Shown piece by piece: positions 20,490 through 60,950 of a stretch of DNA of 64,000 bases. The notes beneath the pieces were generated by a model that searched no databases, was not told where the DNA came from, and was given only the letters and a program-made list of their open reading frames with translations. The stretch's first letter is position 1. Each line of letters begins with the position of its first letter. Made by a program: the position numbers and the translations under genes. The stretch covers positions 372,001 to 436,000 of the forward strand of contig JBLDXI010000055.1 in assembly GCA_047495785.1 (NCBI GenBank), in the 5' to 3' direction. The DNA comes from Lepidodermella squamata (Eukaryota > Animalia > Gastrotricha).

Positions 20490-23400
20490 TCAATGACGTA
20501 GGTGCGTTTCGGGTTTCGGGCGTTTCCCCAATTTCCAGCTCTTACTCATCGTTCTAATTGACCTGAATGTTGCCTTGTTCCGCTGAAAATCTCCAACAAT
20601 CTCCGTCATATCTGCGTCCTCGGGCTGGACAGTTTTCCGAGCGAATGTCACCTTCACAGCCGGGTAGAACCAAAAGGAAGCCGTAGTAATCGAGTAAAGC
20701 AGCATGCCTATAGCTAACAAAGTTATTTGCAAGTTATATCGGCCGGATAAAACGAATGTGATCATTAAAAAGCCAGCGAAAATAGTTAAAGCATTCGCAA
20801 TGGCAACTCGGCACATCGTAGCATCCAGTTTGAACTCGTCACCGATAACTGATTTTCCTAATTGATATGCGAATAAAGAGCCGGTGAGCAATAGGAGGCC
20901 TTGAGATGAAACGAACGCCGATAGCCAGTAAATTTCGAAGTTTGACGAGCAATGTGAGGTCGTCTCTTTGTAAAATGAGTCGCTGAAATCGTCGAACATA
21001 ACACTAGACGTTACGGTTGTAATTTGGAAATCTTGAGTAGGCCCTAACAACCAAGCTAATAGTAACACTCCAGTAAGGAAAACAAAGAGCGTTGAAAACT
21101 TCAGCGTCCTTTTGTCGATGCGACGCCATTCGACGTCAGCTACAAAATGCTGGGAAATCCGAGGTGCTACATGCTGCTTCGCTCTTCGAACCATTGTTCT
21201 CTCGTTAAAAGCCGTGGCGTTATCGTTCACTGTTTTTCCTACTCCATCCGATCTGAATTTTGACGCACTATGAAACGGCAGATTTGCCAGGAGCCAAATC
21301 CTTAGAAATAAGACGCTATTGACCAAGGAAAGACCAACAACTGGCAACACAGCTCGAACAAAGCAATAAGTTTCGGTAACATTTGCGTAAGCAAATGCCT
21401 CCAACAGAATAGCCCCGGAATTCAAGGTAAATAACCCAAGAAAAAAGTAGAAATTCACAGCGACTCTTGCAGGACTAACATTGCCATCTTCGGATCGCGA
21501 GACGATGGAGATTGACGCAATTGAAATTTCAAACAGCGTTACAGCAATGCCAATCGACGTAATCGTCGACATTTCAGACATCGAATATCTGTAAAATCGA
21601 TTCTCGACGTTGGAGAGATCTTTCGGAGGTTTGCCAGATTTAGTCAGCCAAATTGGTTGCTTGTAAATTTCGAGGCTGTACAAACTTAAATTATACAAAG
21701 AGTTCGGGTCAGGTTGTTCTTTCCACGGGATTTTGCATAGTCGGTTGATGGTCCCGTTCGACCACTGCATTATCCACATGTCTTCTGAAGCTAGCTCGAA
21801 TCTTTCAGAGTACTTGATGCGACCGATTCGGATGCCAACAAAATCCAAGGTGGTGGCACTCTCGTTGAAAACCGACGCGACAAAACGAGGCTAAATAAAA
21901 TATAAAAATAAGTACTGGGTCTATACTTAAAACGCGATTTTTGATATTCGCACTTAAATGGCTTTCCGGTGAAGTAATATTCGGAATTGATAACATTTGC
22001 CGGCAAATTCAGCAGTCTTTCCCTATTTTCATAAAGTTCGATCTAAGGTTCTGGACCTTTTAGGTTTCCTGAGCTTTCCAACCCTAATTTCTTGTGTTTT
22101 GCAGGCAATCTGAGGTAATCTCAGCTTGTTGGATGAGATACGATCCTTACTCAGTTTTAAAAGCAGAATAGTACGAATATAAAAAACGAGTACGAATATC
22201 CACTGCGATTAATTATTGGGTCAAAGATGTTGGAATATTCAAATGCGTTATAAAACGTAAATAGGTCAAATTACCATTTTTGGAAAACAAGACCAATTAG
22301 CCTCGAAACCTAAAAATCCAATTGAGTAATGCAGTGCAGATCATGTCTAATATGTCTAACGGGTCAGAAATACGATCCGCTTATGACAAAATAAGGATTT
22401 TCGTTGAATCCGTCTTTTTTGAAATTTAATTTTCTAAAAACTGGAACGCAACTAATACCTGCTGCCTGAAATCTCGAAGCGACATGTTGTGTCTGGCGTT
22501 TAGAATCCGCTCGCCTTTGTCGAGGGTAACTACAGTCGCCATAATAGAATCGTGACAGAGATGTCGCTGGTCGAAATCTGGCGGTATCGTGTAATTCAGC
22601 CTACGCTTCATTTCATTTTCGAACCAGTCCAGCCCGTAACCAAGTGACGTATTAAACAGCCCGGTAGCGCCGGTATTAGTCGGCGGAATCCCGGCCCAAT
22701 AAGTTATCTTCATCTGCTCATAAATCATCGATCGGCTACAACCAGTAGGTAGCGCCAGGTCAGGGCTATCTGCGGTGAAATAGCAGAAAATTTGAGGCAA
22801 AAACACGTAATGAGGGGCTCGCATTCCGGCCAGGTATGAATTGCAGAGAAATCGAACGCACATCGCAACTTGCAGATAGATCAACGCAAAAACCCGCGCT
22901 CCACTTGCCTTAGCCGCTAAAACTTGATCAAGGGTAACATCATCTTCGTTATGATAATGAAGAACTTCGATTCCGTTATCAGCAGCTTTTGAACTCAGCG
23001 TTTTCGCCATCATGTATTCGTTAACATTCAATGAATACGTGAAGATGGCAAGTTGGCGCCAATTGCCGACTTTTTGCATGAATAACATGATAGCAATCAC
23101 ACTGTATTCTCCAGGCATTTGAACTCGGAATAAGTTCGGTAGGACCTTTCGATTCACCAGGTAAGGCCCGGCACAAAACTGCGAGAAATGAGAGATGCTA
23201 AGACTTTTTGCGACGACGTTGACAAATTGACACGTGATGCTTGGACCGCTGACGACAGGCGACAAGTAGCCGGTTACATTTTGCTCGGTCACGTAATCTC
23301 GACCGTAAATATAGGGATCCAAATAACGAATGAGGGCTAAGGATGCGCGTTGGGCGTTCCTAGCCTCGTCCTGAACGTTCAGGGTCACGTGATAATTTGG

Positions 23401-23604
23401 TAGTACATCGCTGTTTTGGTTCAATCGATCGACTACGATTTCCATGGCAGTTTTACAGGCTTTGCCGTTAGCTGGCTCTTTCCCTGTCAGCGGAACCATC
23501 GCCAAGATGGAAAGTTCCATCGGTTTTCGGTCTCTACAGAACGCCAGAGGAAGCACTACAACCAGAATCAAGCACAAGATGAAAACTCGCTGAATCATAT
23601 TCAT
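20490..23604 (-). CDS. Class C GPCR, GABA-B receptor-like (Venus flytrap + 7TM); exons 23604-22459 and 21890-20490
   Basis: Signal peptide; MEIVVDRLNQNSDVLPNYHVTL and PNLFRV flytrap motifs; no Cys-rich linker; 7 hydrophobic segments with ECL2 HCSS...WL. Splicing gives DFRQQ|PRFVASVFNESA, collinear with the paralog at 58488. Confidence 0.85.
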
Positions 23605-25681: not shown

Positions 25682-27505
25682 CTATGGCTTCCCAAGTTGA
25701 GCCGATCGAAGGTATTTCGCTACTTGTTTGTAGCCAGCAGCTTTAACAGCTTTAACAGCCTCAAGTCTAGCGCCACGGCGACGATAGCCCTTGAATTTTT
25801 CGATCAAAAGCTTCACCACTTCGAGGTTGCCAAGTTTAGCCGCATTCATCAAAAGCGATTCACCGTCTTGATTTTTGAAGCTTTTGACCAGCTTGGGGTC
25901 TCTGGACAAGATTGCGTCAACAATGTTAACCTGGCTTTTCTTCACAGACCAGTCCAATACAACCTCCGCAAGATCATTTTTGAAGACGTCATCAATTTGC
26001 TCAAATATTTTTCTCCAGAGAATTTTCAGAAATTCACATGGTCTCATATATTTATCGTTATAGTCATCGTAAGGTATATCTTCCATCTGTTCATACGCTC
26101 GTTCGATGAACGCTTCAATAGTAGACTCGCCTCTGTAATCTGTGTGAAAGAGATTCGCGCCTCGTTTGATCAAGTAGTCCGCAATGTCCCATTCTTTGTG
26201 GTAAGCACTTGACATGAGAGGCGACATGCCCCAAGCTTCTTCCATTTCCAGCATGTCCGGATAATTATCGATAAAATATTGAACCATTTTGAGTTCTGAA
26301 CTTTCTATTGCGAGGTGAATAGTTTGTTTTCGGTATTCGCTGAACGAACTCACTGGACAGATTGCACTCAAATCCACACCGCGTTCTTCTACCAGGTATC
26401 TTACGATTTCAACCTGGCCGTTGTAGGTCGCATGATGAAGAGCTGTGCCGATCAGGCTATTACTGGCTCGGTAGTGCCTCACCAGGTATTCTTTGCAATC
26501 AGAAGGCAACAGATCACTCTCAAAATAAGACTTTACGGCGTTCAAATCGCCGTTATCAACAGCGTTGTAGAACCGCATTTTCTCAGTTGGGATGAAATCT
26601 GCGGCAGGTTTGAACGGTCCATTAGCGAATTCACTCTCGATAGAATTTTCAAGCCATCTCAACTGCAATTTAAAGAATAATTTTAAGAATATATTCAACA
26701 AATTCAATATAATTTAGTCTAACCTTTTCATCAAGTTCTATGATGGTGAAGTAAATATTGCAGGTGTATTCAAGGTTCGACTGAGATACATAAGCTAATT
26801 GGCTGACCAAAAATGAAACATCACAGCTAGAAATGTCTGATTCGCAAAATTTCGGCGGTGTTCTTGAAATGACTGAGTTACGCCTCTCCTCAAGCTATAT
26901 TAGAAAAATTAAAAATAATATAATTTCAAATAGCTTCTTAATCTTACATTATTAGCGAACCACATCGCCTGAAGCCGGATTTCTTCAGCGTGAACCACGG
27001 CGCAAACATCGCAGAATTGTTGGCTACAATGCGAACAAGTTGTCCATTTCTCCAACAGAGCAAAATGCACACATTGTGTTACCAAGCGCCTATGAACGCT
27101 ATGCAGGTTACAAGGCTTCAAACTCCGAGTTATGATTTGCCGCAGATGGTAATCGACAGGCAGTTGGTCGTTGCACCCTTTTACCATCGCGTTGTACTCG
27201 AAGCATTCCATGCATTTTACAAAATTTACGGGTTTACCGTGAATCATTTCTGTCCGCGTATGAAAGGCTCTCACCTTGATACACATCTCGCAGGCTTGGT
27301 GACCGCAAAATGGCAAAACCTTTGGGTTGTTCAAGATGCCATTGCAATCGGGACATTGCAGGAGCTTGTAAAAGCACAACAGAGCAATATAAGGGCTGCG
27401 AGCAAATTAAATTCATACCGTGAAAGAGCGATAGTCATCAATATCTTCTTTGTATTCGAGGGGGTAGGAAAACTTATATGACTCGAGCTTCTTTGTCAAA
27501 GTCAT
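25682..27505 (-). CDS. RING + B-box-like + helical + ankyrin-repeat protein (TRIM-like E3 ligase), copy A, 4 exons
   Basis: CPDC..NPKVLPFCGHQACEMC..CMEC RING, LPVDYHLRQI post-RING motif, CSHCSQQFCDVCAVVH. Phase-0 introns link through exon LEERRNSV..ELDEK to an ankyrin exon (GTALHHATYNGQVEIVRYLV). Confidence 0.8.
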
Positions 27506-28897: not shown

Positions 28898-30723
28898 TTA
28901 AGCTTTCCCAAGTTGAGCCGATCGAAGGCATTTTGCTACTTTTTTGTGGCCAGCAGCTTTAGCAGCGTCTACAGCCTCAAGTCTAGCGCCACGACGATGA
29001 TGGGCCTTGAATTTTTCGGTCAAGAGCTTTACCAGTTCGATGTTGCCAAGTTTAGCCGCATTTGTCAAAAGCGATTCGCCCTGTTTATTTTTGAAGCTTT
29101 TGACCAGACTGGGGTCTCTCGACAAGATGGCGTCGGTAACTCTGATCTGGTTCTTTTTTACAGACCAATCCAAAACAACCTTCTCAAGTTGATGTATGAA
29201 AATGTTGTCAATTTGCTCGATTATCAGTCTCCATAGGATGTTCAAAAAGTCAGAAGCTCTCATGAATTCAACATCACTGTCCTCGAGGCTTTCATCTTCT
29301 ATCGATGAATACCCCAGTTCGAAGAATTCTCCAATGAGGGAGTCGCCTCCTTTATCTTTGTGGTACAGGTTGGCACCTCGTTTGATCAAGTAGTCCGCAA
29401 TGTCCCATTCGCGGTTGTAGGCGCATGACATGAGAGGCGACCAGCCGAAACTTTCCTCCAATTCCAGCATTTCCGGATAGTTATCGAGGAAATATTCAAC
29501 CATTTTGAGTTGCGATTCTTCGATTGCAATGTGTATTGCCAGTTTCCGGGCATCGTTTAGCGAACTCCGGGGACAAATTGCATTCAAATCCACACCACGT
29601 TCCTCTGCCAGGTATCTTACAATTTCAACCTGGCCGCTGTAGGTCGCATGATGAAGAGCTGTGCCGATCAGGCTATTACTGGCTCGGTAATGCCTCACAA
29701 GGTACTCTTTGCAATCAGTTGGCAACAGATCGCTCTCAAAGTAAGACTTCAGGGTGCTTAAGTCGCCGTTGTCAACTGCGTTGTAGAACCGCATTTGCTC
29801 AGTTGGGATGAAGTCTGGGACGTGTTTGAACGGTTTGACGAATTCATTTTCGATGGAATTTTCAAGCCATCTCAACTGAAATTAATAATGGATGTTCAAT
29901 AAATTCAATACAATTCCGGCTCACCTTTTCATCGAGTTCTATGATGGTGAGGTAGATTTTACAGGTGTATTCAAGATTCGACTGTGATGCATAAGCTAAT
30001 TGGCTGACTAATAATGAGATATCACAGCTAGAAATTCCAGAAATGTCAGATTCGCAAAACTTGGGAGGTATTGTTGTAATTCGGCGGATTGCTGAGTTAC
30101 GCCTCTCCTCGAGCTATATTAAAATTTTTCGAAATAATATAATTTTAAATGCCTTCTTAAAACCTTACATTAAAAGCGAACCACAGCGTCTGCAACCGGA
30201 TTTCTTCGGCGTGATACGCGGCGCAAACATCGCAAAATTTTTGGGAGCAATGAGAACAAGTTAACGAATTCTCTACCAAAGCGTGATGTATGCATTGTGT
30301 CGTCAAGCTTCTCTGTAGGAGGCGCGCTCTGCTAGGCTTCAGGCTGCGTGTGATGAGTTGTCGCAGATGATAATCAACAGGCAATTCTTCATCTCGTGTC
30401 ATCGCGCAGTACTCTTTGCATTGAGAGCAAAGAAAGTACCTGACAAGTTTCCCATGTATCATCTCTTTGGGCGAGTGGAAGAACCTTGACTCGATACAGG
30501 ATTCACAGGCTTGGTGACCACAGGTTGGCAAAATCTTTGGATTGTTCAAGACACCTTTGCATTCGGGACATTGCAAGAGCTTTTAATACAAAGTAATATA
30601 AGGCCTGCGAATAAAAATATCATGGCATCTCCTTACCGTGAAGGAACGATAATCGTCGATATCTTCCTCGTAATCGATTGGGTATGCAAATTTATATGAC
30701 TTCAGTCTCTTTACAACAGCCAT
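28898..30723 (-). CDS. RING + B-box-like + ankyrin protein, copy B (tandem paralog of copy A)
   Basis: Same 4-exon structure; start MAVVKRLKSYKFAYPIDYEEDIDDYRSFT; CPEC..CGHQACESC..CSQC; ankyrin ORF 28898-29875. Confidence 0.8.
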
Positions 30724-31263
30724 CTAACGTTATTAATGGTAAAAAAGGAATTCCTCGTATTGCAAAGCAGCCTCAAATAAATGGCAGGGTGGGTCGAGCG
30801 TTAGAAAAAATAAATGGCATGGCTTTTATAATTCTGGCAGAACGGTGATACGAATTCCAAGCAGTGTACAAGCATTTCAGAATCGCAGCTTTAACACTTT
30901 AACTGCCCAAATTACGGCAAAAGTACCGTTGCGGTCGTAACTTAGTAACGGTATTTCGTATCGACACTAAGTTTCGTTATTTCCTACCGAAACATTTTGT
31001 CGTAAAATAATTCCGTTAATTTATTTCGGCACTGTCGGCATTTAGTAACGGAACAAGCTAAAAAAACAACTCGCTTTTACTTGCTATTACCAACGTTATC
31101 AGAAATTGGCTCGGAATTATTGCCTTACTCTAAATGGCGTCACTTACATAGGAAACAGTTCTATATTTCCGAGTTAGGAGCAACAGTTCTCAATAGATTA
31201 CGCAACTACGGCGACAATTTCAATGGAGAATAGTTTTTGAATGATGTTGATTTTTAAATCGTT

Positions 31264-32390
31264 TCAATGGCTGCTCGGCTCACTTTTGACCCTTTTCCGA
31301 GTATTCACCGATGAGCGCGCAGCCGCTGCTGATCGTCGATGGTCAAGGGTTGCTTGGATGGCCGAATCAATCAGGTGATACAACTTGAACGATCCCTGAT
31401 AACGAGCAGCACCCCGAGCAGCCACCGCAAGCCGCATTTCTTCCGGGCACTGGGCCACAGAAACAAAGTTAGTGCCACTAAATCATCACATTTGTAGAAA
31501 TTACAAGATTTTTCTTCTTTTATAAAAGTAACCTTTCTTTGCAAATCCATATAAGCAGCGCTTTTGCATAATCGGCGATTTTGTCATGCGTACTAAATAT
31601 TAGCTCCTCCGTCTTGGCGTCAATTTCTACTTCTTTGCCATAAATCACGCCGAGTTTTATAGGTGGCTTGGGATTTTTCGGCTCGGGCTTCGGAGCTAGT
31701 GCAATAAGCGACGAATCACCACTTGAAATCGAAATAGTTGGAGACGCGGGCGCCGGATGCTTTCGAGCGATTGCCTCAGTGTGACGGACCTCATACCAGA
31801 CAATTTTATTGACGTGCCATTGCATCTTTTCGACCACATCGCTCAGAATCGTGATGATTTGGAACTGCGCTTGGAACTGACCGGGGCATATTTCCGCAAC
31901 CGATTTCGTAAGTGCCAGTTCGATTCGCTCTGCGCCATTAGCACTAAACAGGATGTAATCTGGGACTGGAGCTTGCTCGAACTCAGCTCGCGTGCCAGCC
32001 CTGGATAGATTTGCGGACGATTTTGCTCGACTCGTAGAGGGCTCATCGACTTCGAGTAAATCCGGATCGATTTGAAAGTCGGGGAAATCAGAAGCTGGTG
32101 GCGTAGCTCTCCTGCCTGCAGGTGCTTTCTGCGCAGTAGTTCGTTTACTTGAATTTTTGGTAGGAGTGTCTTGACGTGTCTTCTTCTCAGGAGTTTCTTT
32201 CCGCGTTGCTTTAGCAGAAGCTTCCTTTGCCTGTCGATTTTTTGTTCGACCTTTCGGCTCCGATTGCTTTGTTGCCGCCGCTTGGGCTCGCGATCGAGTT
32301 TCCGGGAGAGATTTGCGGGAACTGCCAATGGCACCATTTTCTTCTTCCTCGACGTCGTCCGCATCCTCGTTCTCGTCGTCATCGTCGTCG

Positions 32391-32422
<32 letters not shown>

Positions 32423-32930
32423 AGTCTCGTCCTCATCGGCCTCGGACACGCTTTCCATTTCCCCGGCTGGTATTGTCTTCCCGTATATGTCCTCTGCTGA
32501 AACTGACTACGATAAATGAATTAGCCATGGGCTATGGTTGCAGATCAAGATAGCTTACCTTGTTGGACTCGTCGCCGCTTTGGCCGCGGTTTTCGGACTC
32601 CATCGCTGCGCAGCAACGCCGGAAATCTTCGTTGTGAGAACCGTCATCTTTCAAGATCGATGGCCTTTCCTCCGTTAGGCGAACCAATCTAGTAGCGGCA
32701 AAGATGGTCTTGTCGAGGAATCCGTAGACAACAATCAATTTTCTTTTCTCAAAGTGATGGAAATTAGATCGATAAAATTGGTCGGGAATATCTTTGCTGT
32801 TTTTGAACGTAGCTGCGGGGTAATAAGAGCGTGTATGCAAGGTCCAGTTGGCGAAGCCTATTTGAGCAAACTTCGTTGGATCGGGGTGATAGTGATCCAA
32901 AGACACACTTTTGTCTTTGTGAAGTTTCAT
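31264..32930 (-). CDS. Transposon-borne second gene: PWWP-like N-terminus, poly-E/D tract, basic linker, BEN-like C-terminus; exons 32930-32559, 32506-31533, 31477-31264
   Basis: Three ORFs join in frame through 52-bp and 55-bp GT-AG introns (about 520 aa, no stops). Domain labels come from my pattern recognition only. Confidence 0.75.
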
Positions 32931-33120
32931 TTCAAAAAATAAATCTTATTCAAGCAATAAATTTCCGAAGAAATGGTTTCTCATGCTCATTTACTGAAAC
33001 GCAGCCTCAATTTATCGGAGCGCTGAGTTTTTCTCATCTCTAATTGATATCAATTCTACTCTCAACTCCCATTCATATAAGTTTTAAATTGGGCAGATCT
33101 TTTTGTTTGTTATCTTTCTA

Positions 33121-34411
33121 ATGGCTCCGGTTTGGCGTAATATAGGCCAGTCATTTCGGCCACGGCGATTTCCCTTCCGACCGACGCCACAATCTCCTGT
33201 AATACCCAACCCTTTCCAGCTCTTCTTGAAAATGGTCGACGCTAATAGACTGTTTCGGGATATTGCGTCGTGGACGAATGCTCATGCATCCGCAAATCGT
33301 TTCATATTCATGAGACCCACTTCGAGTAAGCCATCTCTCTATTCTTTAAATTTATCAAAATCATGATCATCTGGGAATAGGAAGGGCTCGGTGGCGACCA
33401 ACTAGCGCTCATGAAATTGCTGGATTTTTCGGTATCATCATGGATATGGGTTTCGAACATGGTTCGACAATCGAAGACTACTGGTCTACTCGGCGTCGTC
33501 GCCCTCGATTCATGTCGAGAAATCGATTTCAACTTCTACAGTCAACTGTCCGATTTTCTGAACCCAGGAGGGCGTTGATGAACGCGGGCGTAAATCGCCT
33601 AGCTTCAATTCAAGATTTGATTAATCGATTGAATCGGAGATTTCTTATGCTACGATCTGCCCCGCGTTGCTTGGTAATTGATGAATCTCTAATGAATTAT
33701 CGAGGAAAAGTTGTTTTTCGGCAATTCAACAAGTCAAAGCGCCACAAGTATGGAATCAAAATTTACAGGCTTTGCGATCCAACGGGCTACTGTTATCGTT
33801 TCGAAATATACACTGGAAAATCGAATAAGCGAAATGTAACAGCCAGGCTTTGCATGCGCCTTATGCGTCACCACCTCGACCGGGGTCATATCTTATTCAC
33901 TGACAACTATTTTACGTCCTATTTGCTTTCCCGAAAGCTATGGAAACGAAGCACACATCTTGTTGGGACCTTGCGTAAAAACAGAAACGGCAACCCTCAG
34001 GAACTCTTGCAGCGACGCATCGAACGCGGCGATCTGGCTGCTGCGACTGATGATCTCGGAACTTTGATTTTTCGGTTCTTTGATCGACGGGAAGTCATGT
34101 TTCTCTCAAATTTCCACCAAAATAAAAAATCCTTGGACCATTCGAAGCGTACAGGGCATCCCAGATTACTTCCAAAAGCGTTGATTGACTACAATCTCTG
34201 CAAATGCGGCATCGATAAACAAGACCAGATGGCTTCTTACCACTCGGCATTGCGGAAGTCGCGACGGTGGGAATTCAAAGTTGCCGTAGAACTGCTGCTG
34301 AACAGCGCTGTGGTCAACACGTGGTGTCTTTTGCGAAAAATGCCAGGTACAATGGATATTTCCATCAGAGATGTGAGAAAGCAGATCATCGAAGGGCTAA
34401 CTCGGCCCTAG
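33121..34411 (+). CDS. piggyBac DDD transposase (PGBD4-like); exons 33121-33325 and 33381-34411
   Basis: Spliced RWRPTSAHEIAGFFGIIMDMG, then MSRNRF, VIDESL, KRHKYGIK, FTDNYFTS, VGTLRKNR, YN..KCGIDKQDQ. All three catalytic Asp present. Confidence 0.95.
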
Positions 34412-35124
34412 TATCAATACCATTTATTCAAAAACCCAGCGTTGCGTGTCCCAAATGCTCAGCCAGGCTAATTTTTCTTGCTCTTGACATTTTCTTGTGG
34501 ATTTCGAATAAAAATAACGGTATTGTATGTAGAAAGTACCGGTAATTTTTAACGACACAAAATTCCGGTTGAAAATAACGAAACTTATGCCGATACGAAA
34601 TACCGTTACTAAGTTACGACCGCAACGGTACTTTTGCCGTAATTTGGGCAGTTAAAGTGTTAAAACTTAAAATTGACTTTAATCTTGCCTTACAAAAGGC
34701 ATCAGTTGGCACAAGGCACGTGCCAGCCACACATTTTTTACGCAAAAGTTCAGGATTGAATCCTCAGCTATTTTGTATTGTTATTTTCGGAATTCTTAAA
34801 AAATCCTAGAAAATCAGAAAAATCATCCAAGATCGCTACAAGTATCAGAATATAGACCTCAACTTAACCTATTTGGACCATGCAAAAGCTGGTTCAATAT
34901 CGGTCTAATTAATAATAAATAATTGCTTTAAATTAGAACACCAAAATAATTGTTTCATTATTTGATTACCTTATACTACTTACACCCCTTTCCAGCAAAA
35001 AAGTTCATCTGATTTGGCAGACAATTTATTTTTCCGATTTTACGTGTCAATTTCCGCCTCGGTATACATGCGATCGAATGAATCGAATAATAAGACCAAT
35101 CATCAATACTCAGTTCATCAATAC

Positions 35125-58487: not shown

Positions 58488-60950
58488 ATGTTCAAAGTAT
58501 TAATGGCTTTATCAAATTGTCTACTATGTTGTTGCGTGGCGATGACGGATAATTATACAACTAAACGCCACAGCCTTTCTTTGCTTGCAATGGTGCCTTT
58601 GACAGGAAAAGAGCCGGCAGATGGAAAGGCCTGTTCGACGGCTATGGGTATAGTAATAGATAAATTGCGAAATAACTCTGTATTACTGCCTGATTACGTC
58701 GTTCAGCTGACAATCAAAGACGAAGGAAGAAATGCGATAAAAGCTTCATCGGCCCTGGTTGATTTTTTAGATCCGATACTGACGAGCGGATCTTCGTCCG
58801 CGATTTACCGCTCTCCTGTTGTTGTAGGACCCAGCATAACTTGCCAATATGTCAATGCCGTAGCCAAGGAGTTACGAATCACCGAATTCTCACAATTCTG
58901 CGCAGGGCCTTACTTGGTAAATCGTCGCATTCTGCCGAATCTTTACCGAATTCAAATGCCAGGGGAATACAGTATAATTCCGATCTTACTTATCATGAAA
59001 AATATCGGAAATTGGCGTCAAATGGCTGTTTTCACTTACTCCTTGAATGTTAACGAGTATACTATGGCGAAAACGTTGAACGAAAAAGCTGCTGAAAATG
59101 GAATTGAAGTGTTGTATTACCATAACGAAGATGATTTGCGGCTGGATAACGTTTTAGCTGCAAAAGCTAGTGGGGCACGAATTTTCGCGCTAATTTTTCT
59201 CCAAGTGGCCATGTGCGTTCAATTTCTGTGCAATTCTTTCTTAGCCGGAATGCGGGCTCCTCACTACGTTTTCCTTGCCCAAATTTTCTGCTTCTTCACG
59301 GCCGATAGCCCTGATCTGAAGTTACCAAATGGTTGCACTCGTGAGATGGTTTACGAACAGATGAAAATTACGTTTTGGTCGGGCGTTATGCCGACAAATA
59401 CCAGAACTAGGGCAGCTATTAACACGACTCTAGGCTACGATTTGAACTGGTTTGAAGCTGAAATGCGTCGGAGACTTGCGGGCAACCTTCCTGCCGATTT
59501 CGACCAGCGGCATTTATGCCACGATACCATAACAGCTGCTATGGTCACCCTGGACAAAGGCGAGCGAATTTTAAAAGAACGGCATAATTCATCCATCAGA
59601 GATTTTGCTTCAAATCCTCGCTTAGTTGCCTCGGCAATGAACGAAAGCGCGAACTCCTTAGATTTTGTTGGGATCAGATTCGGGAGAATCAAATACTCAG
59701 ATCGCTTTGAACTGGCCGAAGAAGACATGTGGGTGATGCAATGGTCGCCAGAAAGAACAAAACTGTTGTATCGCGTTCCATGGAAGTATCTATCAGACCA
59801 AAATGCGATGTACAACCTTAGCAATTACTATCTCAGTGAAATTGAGCCGCCTAAGTGGTTGACGTTATCTGGAAGTCCTCCGCGGGATCTTTCAGCAATC
59901 AGCCTTCGCTATGATTACATCCCGTTATCAGCTGTAATCTCTATAGCCGCGTTTGCTTTCGGGATTATTTCGTTCAATGCATGTGCAGTTTTTATTGCAG
60001 AGAAAAAAGACAAGTTAGCGAAAGGCAGACGATACTCAAATATTTTCTTTGTGATGGGCTCTACATTTCTCTCCCTGGGTTCGGCGTATTTTGTGGTCGT
60101 GCCTCATGTAGATTCGAATGACGTCAGTTATTGTCAGTTCCGAGTCATCCTGCCTATAATGGGATCGAACTTGATGCTTTTTGTAAATTTTGGTCGCTTA
60201 CTGGCGTTGACCGGAATTCTGAAAAAATTTCGGTTGCCAGTCCCTGCGGCTGCGTCGAGAGCTTCCACAGAAAGCTTTGGAAGACCTTCTGCTGAAATTA
60301 ATTTAAACCTTTTGACCGATCGGGATTGGAGCTTTGTTGATAACAAAGCTATGAAGTTATCTGTATGTTCAGCTTTATTGGTCGTTTTGTTGTTAGCAAG
60401 CTGGGTCTTAGGCCCGTCCGCTGATTTCAGGCTGGACATGGATTCAACCCCTGTTGCTTTTGACGAAATCAACGACACATTTTACGTCATTAGTGTTGTT
60501 CACTGCTCATCGGAATATCAAATCGTTTGGCTGGGCTTCTTCTTGTCTCTTCAAGTTTTTATCATGCTAGTTGGTTGCTGCTTGGCGTACGAAGCTTCGA
60601 AATTCAAAATCGGCACGTTTTACCTGCAGGAAATCAACATTTGTCGAATGCTTCAGCTTACGAGTCTTACGATTTATTCTGCCGCGATACTTGCTATTCT
60701 TATCTTCTCCAGTAGACCGAACTTGTGGGCGATTGCTGTATCAGGAAGCATGCTTCTACAATCACTGTCGGCATCTATTGTTTGGTTCTATCCCCTCCTA
60801 TTCAGCAGTAAATCTGCTATTGGGTACAACGCATTGCCACGCTACACACTACATAGTACTATGACGATGCGAACATCGGGGCCCGCAATGATCGCCAGGA
60901 AATCATCCAACGTTAGGCCGAGGATGCTTTTCACAAGTTATGATCTATGA
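58488..60950 (+). CDS. Intronless class C GPCR, GABA-B receptor-like, 820 aa
   Basis: Single ORF with signal peptide, flytrap domain and 7TM; long identical blocks shared with 20490-23604 (LAMVPLTGKEPA, FSQFCAGPYLVNR, DFDQRHLCHD). Confidence 0.9.
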   Translation: MFKVLMALSNCLLCCCVAMTDNYTTKRHSLSLLAMVPLTGKEPADGKACSTAMGIVIDKLRNNSVLLPDYVVQLTIKDEGRNAIKASSALVDFLDPILTSGSSSAIYRSPVVVGPSITCQYVNAVAKELRITEFSQFCAGPYLVNRRILPNLYRIQMPGEYSIIPILLIMKNIGNWRQMAVFTYSLNVNEYTMAKTLNEKAAENGIEVLYYHNEDDLRLDNVLAAKASGARIFALIFLQVAMCVQFLCNSFLAGMRAPHYVFLAQIFCFFTADSPDLKLPNGCTREMVYEQMKITFWSGVMPTNTRTRAAINTTLGYDLNWFEAEMRRRLAGNLPADFDQRHLCHDTITAAMVTLDKGERILKERHNSSIRDFASNPRLVASAMNESANSLDFVGIRFGRIKYSDRFELAEEDMWVMQWSPERTKLLYRVPWKYLSDQNAMYNLSNYYLSEIEPPKWLTLSGSPPRDLSAISLRYDYIPLSAVISIAAFAFGIISFNACAVFIAEKKDKLAKGRRYSNIFFVMGSTFLSLGSAYFVVVPHVDSNDVSYCQFRVILPIMGSNLMLFVNFGRLLALTGILKKFRLPVPAAASRASTESFGRPSAEINLNLLTDRDWSFVDNKAMKLSVCSALLVVLLLASWVLGPSADFRLDMDSTPVAFDEINDTFYVISVVHCSSEYQIVWLGFFLSLQVFIMLVGCCLAYEASKFKIGTFYLQEINICRMLQLTSLTIYSAAILAILIFSSRPNLWAIAVSGSMLLQSLSASIVWFYPLLFSSKSAIGYNALPRYTLHSTMTMRTSGPAMIARKSSNVRPRMLFTSYDL

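What the first reader, a model, noticed from the sequence alone, without database searches (positions are those of the whole stretch)
30895..34659. Candidate two-component piggyBac: transposase lacking its Cys-rich domain paired head-to-head with a PWWP-like/acidic/BEN-like gene
Seen: inside TTAA-flanked perfect TIRs lie two intact spliced genes pointing apart, ATGs 190 bp apart (32930 and 33121). The transposase keeps its DDD triad but stops at EGLTRP without a Cys-rich tail. Known: canonical piggyBac encodes one protein whose C-terminal Cys-rich domain binds the TIRs, whereas PIF/Harbinger elements use a separate DNA-binding partner. Inference: the second protein may supply TIR binding and chromatin reading in trans (targeting or anti-silencing), giving a Harbinger-like design in the piggyBac superfamily. 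I am not aware of this combination being described, but cannot search.
Basis: partly seen in the sequence, partly recalled or inferred. Interest (0 to 1): 0.92.

Follow-up and report, generated by a model that had tools for sequence, protein, structure and literature searches.

The report
Two-gene piggyBac transposon lacking zinc finger
This is a real, recently active piggyBac-type jumping gene whose cutting enzyme has lost its usual zinc-finger DNA grip and which always travels with a second, otherwise unknown gene, kept intact in three old branches of the family, so the second gene is probably a helper for jumping.

Summary
Window 30895-34659 is a 3,765-bp element with TTAA on both sides and 69-nt perfect inverted ends. 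It holds two intact spliced genes whose ATGs point apart, 190 bp from each other.

Gene 1 is a 411-aa piggyBac transposase. It keeps the DDD triad but stops about 100 residues short of its relatives, with no Cys-rich domain (CRD).

Gene 2 (G2, 519 aa, three exons) has no sequence relatives in 1.84 billion proteins.

The key new result is that the same head-to-head pair sits inside TTAA/TIR elements of three subfamilies of this genome. Their transposases are 46-75% identical. G2 is 28-48% identical, with silent sites saturated and the two shared G2 introns at the same positions and phase. All transposases, and a 68% relative from another public sample, end at the same CRD-less position and form one clade among CRD-bearing relatives.

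So G2 is an integral, selected gene of the element, not a one-off capture. Its function is not shown:
- The N-terminal domain folds confidently into an SH3-like barrel whose nearest solved structures are all PWWP domains, at weak scores.
- "BEN-like" found no support.
- The TIR-binding role is untested.

No usable RNA data and no complex prediction were obtained. The scan's first readers noted the same architecture on another contig (s1-379678).

The parts
30891..30894 (.). Left TTAA target-site duplication
   Evidence: Read directly. All copies at other loci have TTAA next to the same tip with unrelated flanks.
30895..30963 (+). Left terminal inverted repeat. It is perfect for 69 nt, and imperfect repeat similarity runs on to about 31022.
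   Evidence: The tip CACTTTAA(C/G)TGCC is shared by all three subfamilies.
30895..31154 (.). Left subterminal region with repeated AACGGTA motifs
   Evidence: AACGGTA or its complement occurs 5 times in the two 260-nt ends and 0 times in the 3,245-nt interior.
31264..31477 (-). G2 exon 3: the end of the C-terminal conserved domain, a basic tail and the stop codon
   Evidence: Frame and splice sites. Homologous exon with the same intron phase in subfamily 3.
31533..32506 (-). G2 exon 2: acidic run, basic region, conserved middle domain and the start of the C-terminal domain
   Evidence: Charge profile. Conserved at 39-45% in subfamily 2.
32559..32930 (-). G2 exon 1: N-terminal SH3-like/PWWP-like barrel domain
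   Evidence: AF2 model with pLDDT 83.7. Nearest solved folds are PWWP domains, Z 3.6-4.8 and Foldseek E 0.1-1. 46-48% identical in subfamily 2 and 28% in subfamily 3.
32931..33120 (.). 190-bp intergenic region between the two divergent ATGs; presumed bidirectional promoter (inferred)
   Evidence: Position only. One decayed copy (C31) has an unrelated ~880-bp TIR element inserted here.
33121..33325 (+). Transposase exon 1 (68 codons plus 1 base)
   Evidence: 56% identical in subfamily 2.
33381..34411 (+). Transposase exon 2: DDE_Tnp_1_7 core with the DDD triad, ending without a CRD
   Evidence: Pfam 3e-64. Aligned to the solved piggyBat transposase, with piggyBac matching the same core. Relatives at <=41% identity carry Cys-rich tails beyond this end point. 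No PF13842 match.
34400..34659 (.). Right subterminal region with AACGGTA-type repeats
34591..34659 (-). Right terminal inverted repeat (69 nt perfect)
34660..34663 (.). Right TTAA target-site duplication

Best explanation
The element is an autonomous-looking, recently mobile member of a distinct piggyBac clade.

Shown:
- The transposase of this clade lost the C-terminal Cys-rich domain once, at the base of the clade.
- The element encodes a second, clade-specific protein (G2), transcribed divergently from the same short intergenic region.
- G2 has been co-inherited with the transposase and kept under purifying selection through a divergence that saturated silent sites.

Inferred:
- G2 is an accessory factor of transposition that acts in trans. 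It may couple the very basic, CRD-less transposase to its substrate or target.
- G2's layout is an N-terminal SH3/PWWP-like barrel, a long acidic run, a Lys/Arg-rich region (a possible NLS or unspecific DNA contact), and two conserved C-terminal domains that could contact the transposase. This resembles a chromatin or DNA tether such as LEDGF/p75, or the RAG2 partner of RAG1.
- It resembles a classical sequence-specific TIR binder less well.
- In design, the system would work like the two-protein PIF/Harbinger, CACTA or ProtoRAG transposons.
For: The element is real and mobile:
- It has TTAA flanks and 69-nt perfect TIRs.
- Five or more copies at 95-99% identity lie at different loci with different flanks.
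- Both genes are intact in the window copy and in the C67/C44 copy.
- The 17-nt TTAA+tip motif has 139 exact matches genome-wide, against 0 for the reversed control. They include many ~512-bp MITE-like pairs.

The pairing is conserved:
- Subfamily 2 (C3, C64; transposase 56-75% identical, G2 38-48%) has the same head-to-head order inside TIR elements with 4-bp duplications.
- Subfamily 3 (C15; transposase 46-48%, G2 28-35%) has the same arrangement.
- The two G2 introns shared by subfamilies 1 and 3 keep their position and phase.

Selection:
- Between subfamilies dS is saturated (>2 or undefined), while G2 dN is 0.5-0.7, giving w of about 0.2-0.3 or less.
- Subfamily 2 against an old fragment gives w = 0.21.

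CRD loss is ancestral and single:
- All three subfamilies and P0001 (68% identical, another public sample) stop within one residue of each other.
- They form one clade, SH-aLRT 99, among CRD-bearing relatives.

G2 occurs only in elements:
- Every G2 homologue in the genome lies in a full element copy or is a broken or partial fragment, several beside matching element ends.

Background from papers:
- The CRD is essential for canonical piggyBac cleavage, joining and transposition (PMC5861402).
- The canonical NLS lies in the C-terminal 94 residues (cited in PMC3902484).
- A lineage that lost this tail and still spreads therefore needs a substitute.

Subterminal repeat motifs differ between subfamilies (AACGGTA, TTCGAAA, AGACTTG), and G2 evolves faster than the transposase.
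Against: - No function of G2 was shown.
- No DNA-binding family was recognised by Pfam, by PDB profiles, by 1.84 billion representative proteins or by Atlas features.
- G2's middle and C-terminal conserved domains are mildly acidic, pI 5.9 and 5.8. That is unusual for a sequence-specific DNA binder.
- The two subfamily-2 copies, at different loci, share a deletion of the C-terminal domain core yet keep an apparently intact transposase. An intact G2 is therefore not needed in cis. It could still be supplied in trans, but no intact subfamily-2 G2 was found.
- The only full subfamily-3 copy has a 1-nt frameshift in a C5/A4 homopolymer in G2 exon 1.
- Differences among the young subfamily-1 copies are too few to show selection.
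- No transcript evidence was obtained.
- The complex prediction gave no answer.
Confidence: 0.5

Rival explanations
1. G2 is an element-encoded regulator rather than part of the transposition machinery. It could be an anti-silencing factor, like VANC of Arabidopsis VANDAL elements (from my own knowledge), or a self-limiting repressor that acts on the element's chromatin or promoter.
For: - G2 has a chromatin-reader-like N-terminal barrel and a long acidic run, as in histone-binding proteins.
- G2 evolves faster than the transposase, in parallel with subfamily-specific subterminal repeats.
- Copies with a damaged G2 still spread.
Against: - It does not explain how a CRD-less transposase recognises its ends.
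- No evidence on methylation, silencing or expression was available.
- The fold match is weak.
Confidence: 0.22
2. The transposase is self-sufficient, or is helped by factors encoded elsewhere. The long TIRs could be bound by its own dimerisation/DNA-binding domains. Alternatively a CRD could be supplied in trans by the stand-alone piggyBac-type zinc-finger genes of this genome or by other piggyBac families. G2 would then be dispensable for mobility.
For: - Subfamily-2 copies with a deleted G2 domain lie at two loci.
- MITEs with the same tips carry no genes.
- PF13842 matches exist elsewhere in the genome, for example three on C42:2512362-2521677.
- Earlier scan notes report arrays of stand-alone CRD genes (s1-374066, s1-373937).
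Against: - Non-autonomous copies are normally moved in trans, so damaged copies say little.
- G2 has been kept open and constrained for a long time, which a useless gene would not be.
- None of the more distant (<=40% identical) piggyBac transposase matches listed has the exact CACTTTAA tip within 10 kb among the 100 of 139 places that one search lists.
Confidence: 0.15
3. G2 is a passenger: a host gene captured once and carried along with no role for the element.
For: - Other piggyBac elements of this genome are reported to carry orphan cargo genes (scan notes s1-384304, s1-404867, s1-373936).
- G2 has no recognisable family.
Against: - The pair has the same position and orientation in three subfamilies whose transposases are only 46-75% identical, and G2's shared introns match between subfamilies 1 and 3.
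- w is about 0.2-0.3 with saturated dS.
- No host copy was found outside element remnants.
- The gain of G2 coincides on the tree with loss of the CRD.
Confidence: 0.06

Closest known systems
Canonical piggyBac / piggyBat elements (piggyBac superfamily)
   Same: - TTAA target duplication and terminal inverted repeats.
- A DDE_Tnp_1_7 core with the DDD triad, alignable to the solved piggyBat transposase (9c0f), with piggyBac (6x67) matching the same core.
   Different: - There is no Cys-rich domain, and the protein ends inside or at the end of the second DNA-binding/dimerisation region.
- The N-terminus is short (411 aa against 578-594).
- The TIRs are long (69 nt perfect, about 130 nt imperfect).
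- The tip is CAC... rather than the canonical CCC...GGG (the canonical tip is from my own knowledge).
- A second conserved gene is present. Surveys describe single-ORF elements (PMC10813416), and large-scale mining requires a CRD (PMC13461360), so this clade would be filtered out.
PIF/Harbinger transposons (transposase plus Myb-like partner)
   Same: - The design is two separately encoded proteins inside one TIR element.
- In Harbinger the partner is needed for DNA binding, recruitment and nuclear import of the transposase (my own knowledge: Sinzelle et al. 2008).
   Different: - It is a different transposase superfamily, with a different target duplication.
- G2 has no Myb/SANT/trihelix domain.
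- A requirement for G2 is not shown.
ProtoRAG / RAG1-RAG2 (Transib-derived)
   Same: - A DDE transposase is paired, inside TIRs, with a partner that has a chromatin-reader module and an acidic region. RAG2 has a PHD finger reading H3K4me3 and an acidic hinge (my own knowledge).
   Different: - The protein families are unrelated.
- The RAG genes are arranged convergently.
- G2's reader function is only a weak fold inference.
LEDGF/p75 (PSIP1), the host tether of lentiviral integrase
   Same: The domain order is similar: an N-terminal PWWP-type barrel, charged/NLS regions, then a C-terminal protein-binding domain (my own knowledge).
   Different: - LEDGF is a host protein with a bona fide PWWP domain.
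- G2 is element-encoded, has no sequence similarity to it, and no binding was shown.
PiggyMac/PgmL complexes of Paramecium
   Same: A piggyBac-type catalytic subunit depends on separately encoded partner proteins. The Pgm CRD binds the histone H3 tail rather than DNA (PMC8086355, PMC6143343).
   Different: - Those are domesticated host genes, and the partners are themselves piggyBac-derived and keep CRDs.
- Here the system is a mobile element with an unrelated partner.

Membership tests
piggyBac superfamily | TTAA target-site duplication flanking terminal inverted repeats | tested here: met
   Copies at five or more loci all have TTAA plus the same tip. The subfamily-3 copy has TTAT on both sides.
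piggyBac superfamily | DDE_Tnp_1_7 transposase core with the DDD triad | tested here: met
   Pfam 3e-64, profile positions 31-349 of 349. The three D residues align with those of the piggyBat transposase.
piggyBac superfamily | C-terminal Cys-rich (PHD-like) domain in the transposase | tested here: not met
   The protein stops at ...EGLTRP. There is no PF13842 match in any frame of any copy. Relatives at <=41% identity carry the tail.
piggyBac superfamily | Single transposase ORF as the only gene | tested here: not met
   A second conserved gene is present in three subfamilies.
PIF/Harbinger-type two-component transposon | DDE_Tnp_4-type transposase, a Myb/SANT-like partner and a 3-bp target duplication | tested here: not met
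   The transposase is DDE_Tnp_1_7. G2 has no Myb/SANT match. The duplication is 4 bp. The resemblance is in design only.
PWWP domain (PF00855) | Match to the sequence profile | tested here: not met
   Nothing in a Pfam scan of exon 1 except Tudor_3 at E 0.014, below its cut-off. A six-frame PF00855 search of the genome finds true PWWP genes but no G2 copy. A PDB profile search finds none.
PWWP domain (PF00855) | Five-stranded barrel followed by helices, superposable on solved PWWP domains | tested here: inconclusive
   The model has pLDDT 83.7. The top 11 of 48,161 chains are all PWWP, but with Z only 3.6-4.8. Foldseek E is 0.1-1. Atlas gives generic SH3-like barrels with TM <0.5.
PWWP domain (PF00855) | Aromatic cage binding methyl-lysine | not tested
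   From sequence alone: Y36 (start of strand 2) and Y70/F72 (strand 3 and just after it) are kept in all subfamilies, Y37 only in subfamilies 1 and 2, and W29 is not kept. No structural or binding test was run.
BEN domain (PF10523) | Match to the sequence profile | tested here: not met
   No match for exon 2, exon 3 or the uninterrupted homologue L036 at E<=10. A six-frame genome search hits no G2 copy. PDB profile search: none.
BEN domain (PF10523) | BEN fold | tested here: inconclusive
   The only model that could be made, of the homologue L036 (C-terminal region uninterrupted by the intron), failed with pLDDT 34. The window's own domain is split by an intron and could not be submitted whole.

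The most novel reading that the evidence does not exclude
This is the first piggyBac lineage organised as an obligate two-component transposon. After loss of the CRD, and with it the canonical NLS region, end recognition, nuclear import and/or target choice passed to a separately encoded, fast-evolving partner with a chromatin-reader-like barrel. This would be a convergent reinvention of the Harbinger or RAG1-RAG2 design within piggyBac.
Probability: 0.35. Interest if true: 0.8.

Novelty: new variant of a known kind. Interest (0 to 1): 0.62.

Why it matters
piggyBac is a workhorse of genome engineering. It is thought to need only one protein, whose Cys-rich domain is essential.

A natural, recently mobile clade lacks that domain and has kept a private partner gene for a long time. 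This points to a different way of recognising ends or choosing targets, and it offers a separable module that could be engineered for targeting.

It also shows a blind spot. Current mining pipelines demand a CRD and a single ORF, so they would discard such elements.

Finally, it adds an independent case to the recurrent evolution of transposase-plus-partner systems (Harbinger, CACTA, ProtoRAG).

Tried and rejected
Searches for G2 relatives, all blank:
- The search for homologous proteins on the G2 C-terminal half: nothing.
- HMM of the N-terminal domain against 1.84 billion representative proteins: 0 hits.
- Metagenome contig scan: nothing.
- Atlas feature searches: nothing usable.
- PDB profile searches: nothing.

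Domain tests:
- Pfam BEN and PWWP profiles do not hit G2.
- The second structure job, on the homologue L036 whose C-terminal region is not split by the intron, failed with pLDDT 34. The BEN question therefore stays open structurally and negative by sequence.
- The window's own spliced C-terminal domain has no reference and was not typed in, so that step was left out.

Expression:
- Two run searches found no run on record as RNA.
- Laying X1 and X2 on the element gave only DNA-like full coverage (X2) and tiny low-depth contigs without splice joints (X1). This says nothing on transcription or splicing.

Binding:
- Complex prediction with the transposase core against the three G2 pieces gave 'no answer'. 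It is not evidence either way.

Other:
- dN/dS among the 98-99% identical copies had too few changes and scattered from 0.1 to 3.8.
- An empty-site allele of the window insertion was not found in the assembly.
- The organism was not identified. A host GPCR query gave one unnamed hit, and the accession of the run holding P0001 appears in no paper.

Rejected idea: a hidden CRD exon downstream of the transposase stop. No PF13842 signal lies in any frame, and the stop is at the same place in all lineages.
Full report
**Observation**

- TTAA sits at 30891-30894 and 34660-34663.
- The inverted repeat found by the repeat tool spans 30887-30966 and 34588-34667, 80 nt at 98%.
- Counted from the element's first and last base (30895 and 34659), the two ends are identical for 69 nt. 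They stay similar for about 130 nt.

Two genes lie between the ends.
- **Transposase.** It is encoded by 33121-33325 and 33381-34411 on the + strand, with a 55-nt GT/AG intron, and gives 411 aa. Its second exon matches Pfam DDE_Tnp_1_7 at 3e-64 over profile positions 31-349 of 349. It aligns with the solved piggyBat transposase (9c0f, residues 143-459) and matches piggyBac (6x67, residues 166-485) over the same core. All three catalytic aspartates are in place in the piggyBat alignment.
- **G2.** The second gene lies on the - strand in three exons: 32930-32559, 32506-31533 and 31477-31264. All splice sites are GT/AG, and the product is 519 aa.
- The two ATGs are 190 bp apart.

**The missing Cys-rich domain**

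- The transposase ends at ...EGLTRP, 23 residues after the end of its alignment with piggyBat residue 459 of 578.
- Its closest named relatives are insect PGBD4-like proteins at 41% identity or less. They continue for some 60-110 more residues and end in the usual Cys-rich tail.
- The last 60 residues here hold one Cys.
- A six-frame search of the whole genome with PF13842 (zf-Tnp_2) at E<=10 finds matches elsewhere, but none in any copy of this element or its sister subfamilies.

**Copies and mobility**

The genome has 121 Mb in 151 contigs. Copies of the element at 95-99% identity are:

| Place | State |
|---|---|
| Window copy (C55) | Full length |
| C67 and C44 | Same flanks, so probably one locus assembled twice; lack 72 bp of the left end |
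| C73 | Two arms joined head to head with mirror-image flanks, 1 kb from the contig end; probably a fold-back in the assembly |
| C31 | Interrupted in the intergenic region by an unrelated ~880-bp TIR element; decayed |
| C102, C29, C40 | Fragments |

- Independent loci have unrelated flanks, and each has TTAA next to the same tip.
- Both genes are intact in the window copy and in C67/C44. In C31 both are broken.
- The 17-nt motif TTAA+CACTTTAA(C/G)TGCC occurs 139 times exactly in the genome, against 0 for the reversed control. Many occurrences are inward-facing pairs about 512 bp apart.
- These short elements share only the ~24-28-nt tip, plus a repeat motif like that of subfamily 3. They look like MITEs moved by this clade.
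- Among the 100 of 139 places that one search lists, no exact tip lies within 10 kb of any of the more distant (<=40% identical) piggyBac transposase matches.

**The decisive result: the pair is conserved**

Searching the genome with G2's domains found homologues next to diverged transposases.
- **Subfamily 2** has two copies, 97% identical to each other (C3 = L032:2237-5858; C64 = L031:744-4322). They have their own 60-74-nt TIRs, TTAA flanks and different surroundings. The transposase is 56-75% identical. G2 is 38-48% identical, in the same divergent position.
- **Subfamily 3** has one full copy (C15 = L035:2435-6378) with 107-nt TIRs and TTAT on both sides. The transposase is 46-48% identical and G2 is 28-35% identical, again head to head.
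- The two G2 introns shared by subfamilies 1 and 3 are at the same places and in the same phase. One precedes the ..IYGK motif. The other splits the C-terminal domain after two bases of a codon.
- All three transposases stop within one residue of each other (..GLTRP..GLTRL..GLLKP). So does P0001, a 68%-identical protein from a Logan contig of another public run.
- In a quick maximum-likelihood tree of 55 proteins these four form one clade (SH-aLRT 99) on a long stem among relatives, most of which carry a recognisable CRD motif. CRD loss is therefore single and ancestral to the clade.
- Between subfamilies silent sites are saturated (dS >2 or not computable), while G2 has dN 0.5-0.7. This gives w of about 0.2-0.3 as an upper estimate. 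Subfamily 2 against an older fragment gives w = 0.21 at dS 0.58.
- All other G2-like sequences in the genome (C34, C4, C75, C15:1.67 Mb) are broken or partial fragments. Several lie next to matching element ends. No TIR-free host copy was seen.

G2 is not a one-off capture, and full copies in three lineages carry it.

**What G2 is**

By sequence it is an orphan.
- Pfam gives nothing significant.
- A profile of the N-terminal domain finds 0 of 1.84 billion representative proteins.
- The word-based search, a metagenome contig scan, Atlas feature searches and PDB profile searches all found nothing.

By structure, the N-terminal 124 residues fold with confidence (pLDDT 83.7, pTM 0.77) into a five-stranded barrel with a helical insert and a long C-terminal helix.
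- An exhaustive structural comparison with 48,161 solved chains puts PWWP domains in the first 11 places. The scores are low: Z 3.6-4.8, with 77-96 residues aligned.
- Foldseek lists mainly PWWP and Tudor domains, at E 0.1-1.
- The Atlas gives generic SH3-like barrels with TM below 0.5.
- I read this as a divergent SH3/Royal-family barrel, most like PWWP. It does not show reader function.

The rest of G2:

| Residues | Feature |
|---|---|
| 125-180 | Acidic run, 34 of 56 residues D or E |
| 181-262 | Lys/Arg-rich stretch, pI 11.7 |
| ~301-385 | Conserved middle domain, pI 5.9 |
| ~419-495 | Conserved C-terminal domain, pI 5.8 |
| 496-519 | Basic tail |

The 'BEN-like' label has no support. The BEN profile misses every piece and every copy, and the one model I could make of that region failed at pLDDT 34. 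The window's own C-terminal domain is split by an intron, so it had no reference and could not be submitted whole.

**How it most likely works**

Shown: a CRD-less piggyBac clade has stayed mobile and has kept a partner gene under constraint.

From the literature:
- The CRD is essential for cleavage, joining and transposition of canonical piggyBac (PMC5861402).
- The canonical nuclear localisation signal lies in the C-terminal 94 residues (cited in PMC3902484).
- In Paramecium, PiggyMac's CRD binds histone H3 rather than DNA, and the enzyme works with separately encoded partners (PMC8086355, PMC6143343).

Inferred:
- G2 replaces some of what the lost tail did. Candidates are recruitment of the very basic transposase (pI 11.3) to the ends or to chromatin, and perhaps nuclear import.
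- Its domain order resembles a tether (reader-like barrel, charged linkers, C-terminal interaction domains) more than a classical sequence-specific DNA binder.
- Each subfamily has its own subterminal repeat (AACGGTA, TTCGAAA, AGACTTG; 5-6 times in the ends and 0-1 times inside), and G2 evolves faster than the transposase. This fits co-evolution of a recognition factor with its sites, but fits the transposase's own DNA-binding regions equally well.

Cautions:
- The two subfamily-2 copies share a deletion of the C-terminal domain core of G2 but keep an apparently intact transposase.
- The single full subfamily-3 copy has a 1-nt frameshift in a homopolymer in G2 exon 1. This could be a real mutation or a long-read assembly error.
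- Damaged copies can be moved in trans, so these do not refute a role for G2. They do show that G2 is not needed in cis.
- There are no RNA data, and the complex prediction gave no verdict.

**Comparison with known systems and novelty**

- By ends, target site and catalytic core the element belongs to the piggyBac superfamily. It fails two features usually treated as part of the definition: the CRD and the single ORF.
- In design it works like PIF/Harbinger, CACTA or ProtoRAG, but it belongs to none of them.
- In the open literature I could search, no piggyBac with a conserved second gene or a naturally CRD-less mobile clade turned up.
- One survey states that the elements it detected contain single ORFs (PMC10813416).
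- The largest mining study requires a CRD and reports only terminal fusion domains (PMC13461360).
- Repbase could not be checked.
- I therefore rate it a new variant of a known kind.
- The scan's first readers flagged the same architecture on another contig of this genome (s1-379678). Other notes report piggyBac elements with orphan cargo and arrays of stand-alone CRD genes in this animal. Those notes make the trans-CRD rival worth testing.

Noticed in passing
G000 genome-wide; e.g. L039:1501-2013, L043:1501-2013, L062:1501-2012: A family of ~512-bp MITE-like elements has TTAA flanks and the same CACTTTAAC tip. The 17-nt TTAA+tip motif has 139 exact matches in the genome against 0 for the reversed control. 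The MITEs share only the ~24-28-nt tip and a subfamily-3-like repeat with the gene-bearing elements.
   Followed up: partly
L024 (G000:C73:516887-524433): Two copies of the element are joined head to head with mirror-image flanks, 1 kb from the contig end. This is probably a fold-back assembly artefact rather than a real palindrome.
   Followed up: partly
L022 (C67) and L023 (C44): The two contigs carry the same insertion with the same flanks, probably haplotigs or a duplicated assembly region. This copy lacks the outer 72 bp of the left TIR although both genes are intact.
   Followed up: partly
L025:2031-2908 (C31 copy); also L035:7401-8057: An unrelated ~880-bp element with 21-nt TIRs starting CACAGTAAAAAA is nested in the 190-bp intergenic region of a decayed copy. 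It recurs beside the subfamily-3 element.
   Followed up: partly
L027:497-4345 (G000:C36:433552-437400): A 3.8-kb non-autonomous derivative has 108-nt TIRs like subfamily 1 and TTAA flanks, but neither gene. Its interior holds an ORF that I judge by eye (no profile search) to look like the tail of a non-LTR retrotransposon protein.
   Followed up: partly
L035:2435-6378 (G000:C15:1112434-1116377): The subfamily-3 copy is flanked by TTAT on both sides instead of TTAA, a non-canonical 4-bp duplication. Its transposase, like that of subfamily 2, has an extra intron just before the second catalytic Asp motif that subfamily 1 lacks.
   Followed up: partly
L038 (Logan contig of SRR19603261) and run X3 (organism C): A 68%-identical CRD-less transposase (P0001) lies on a 1.5-kb contig of another public run. 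It branches inside this genome's clade, as sister to subfamilies 1+2. A run labelled as a third organism holds 24% of the sampled words of the window's transposase exon. Whether this reflects relatives or horizontal transfer is unknown.
   Followed up: no
G000:C42:2512362-2521677 and other places listed: Matches to the piggyBac zinc-finger profile (PF13842) lie outside these elements. Three of them fall within 10 kb on C42. This fits earlier scan notes on stand-alone CRD genes.
   Followed up: no
window 22429-23604, 25685-26707, 28901-29875, 58488-60947: Neighbouring long ORFs encode ANF_receptor-type ligand-binding regions (class-C GPCR-like) and ankyrin-repeat proteins. The element lies between host genes, not inside a recognised exon.
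   Followed up: no
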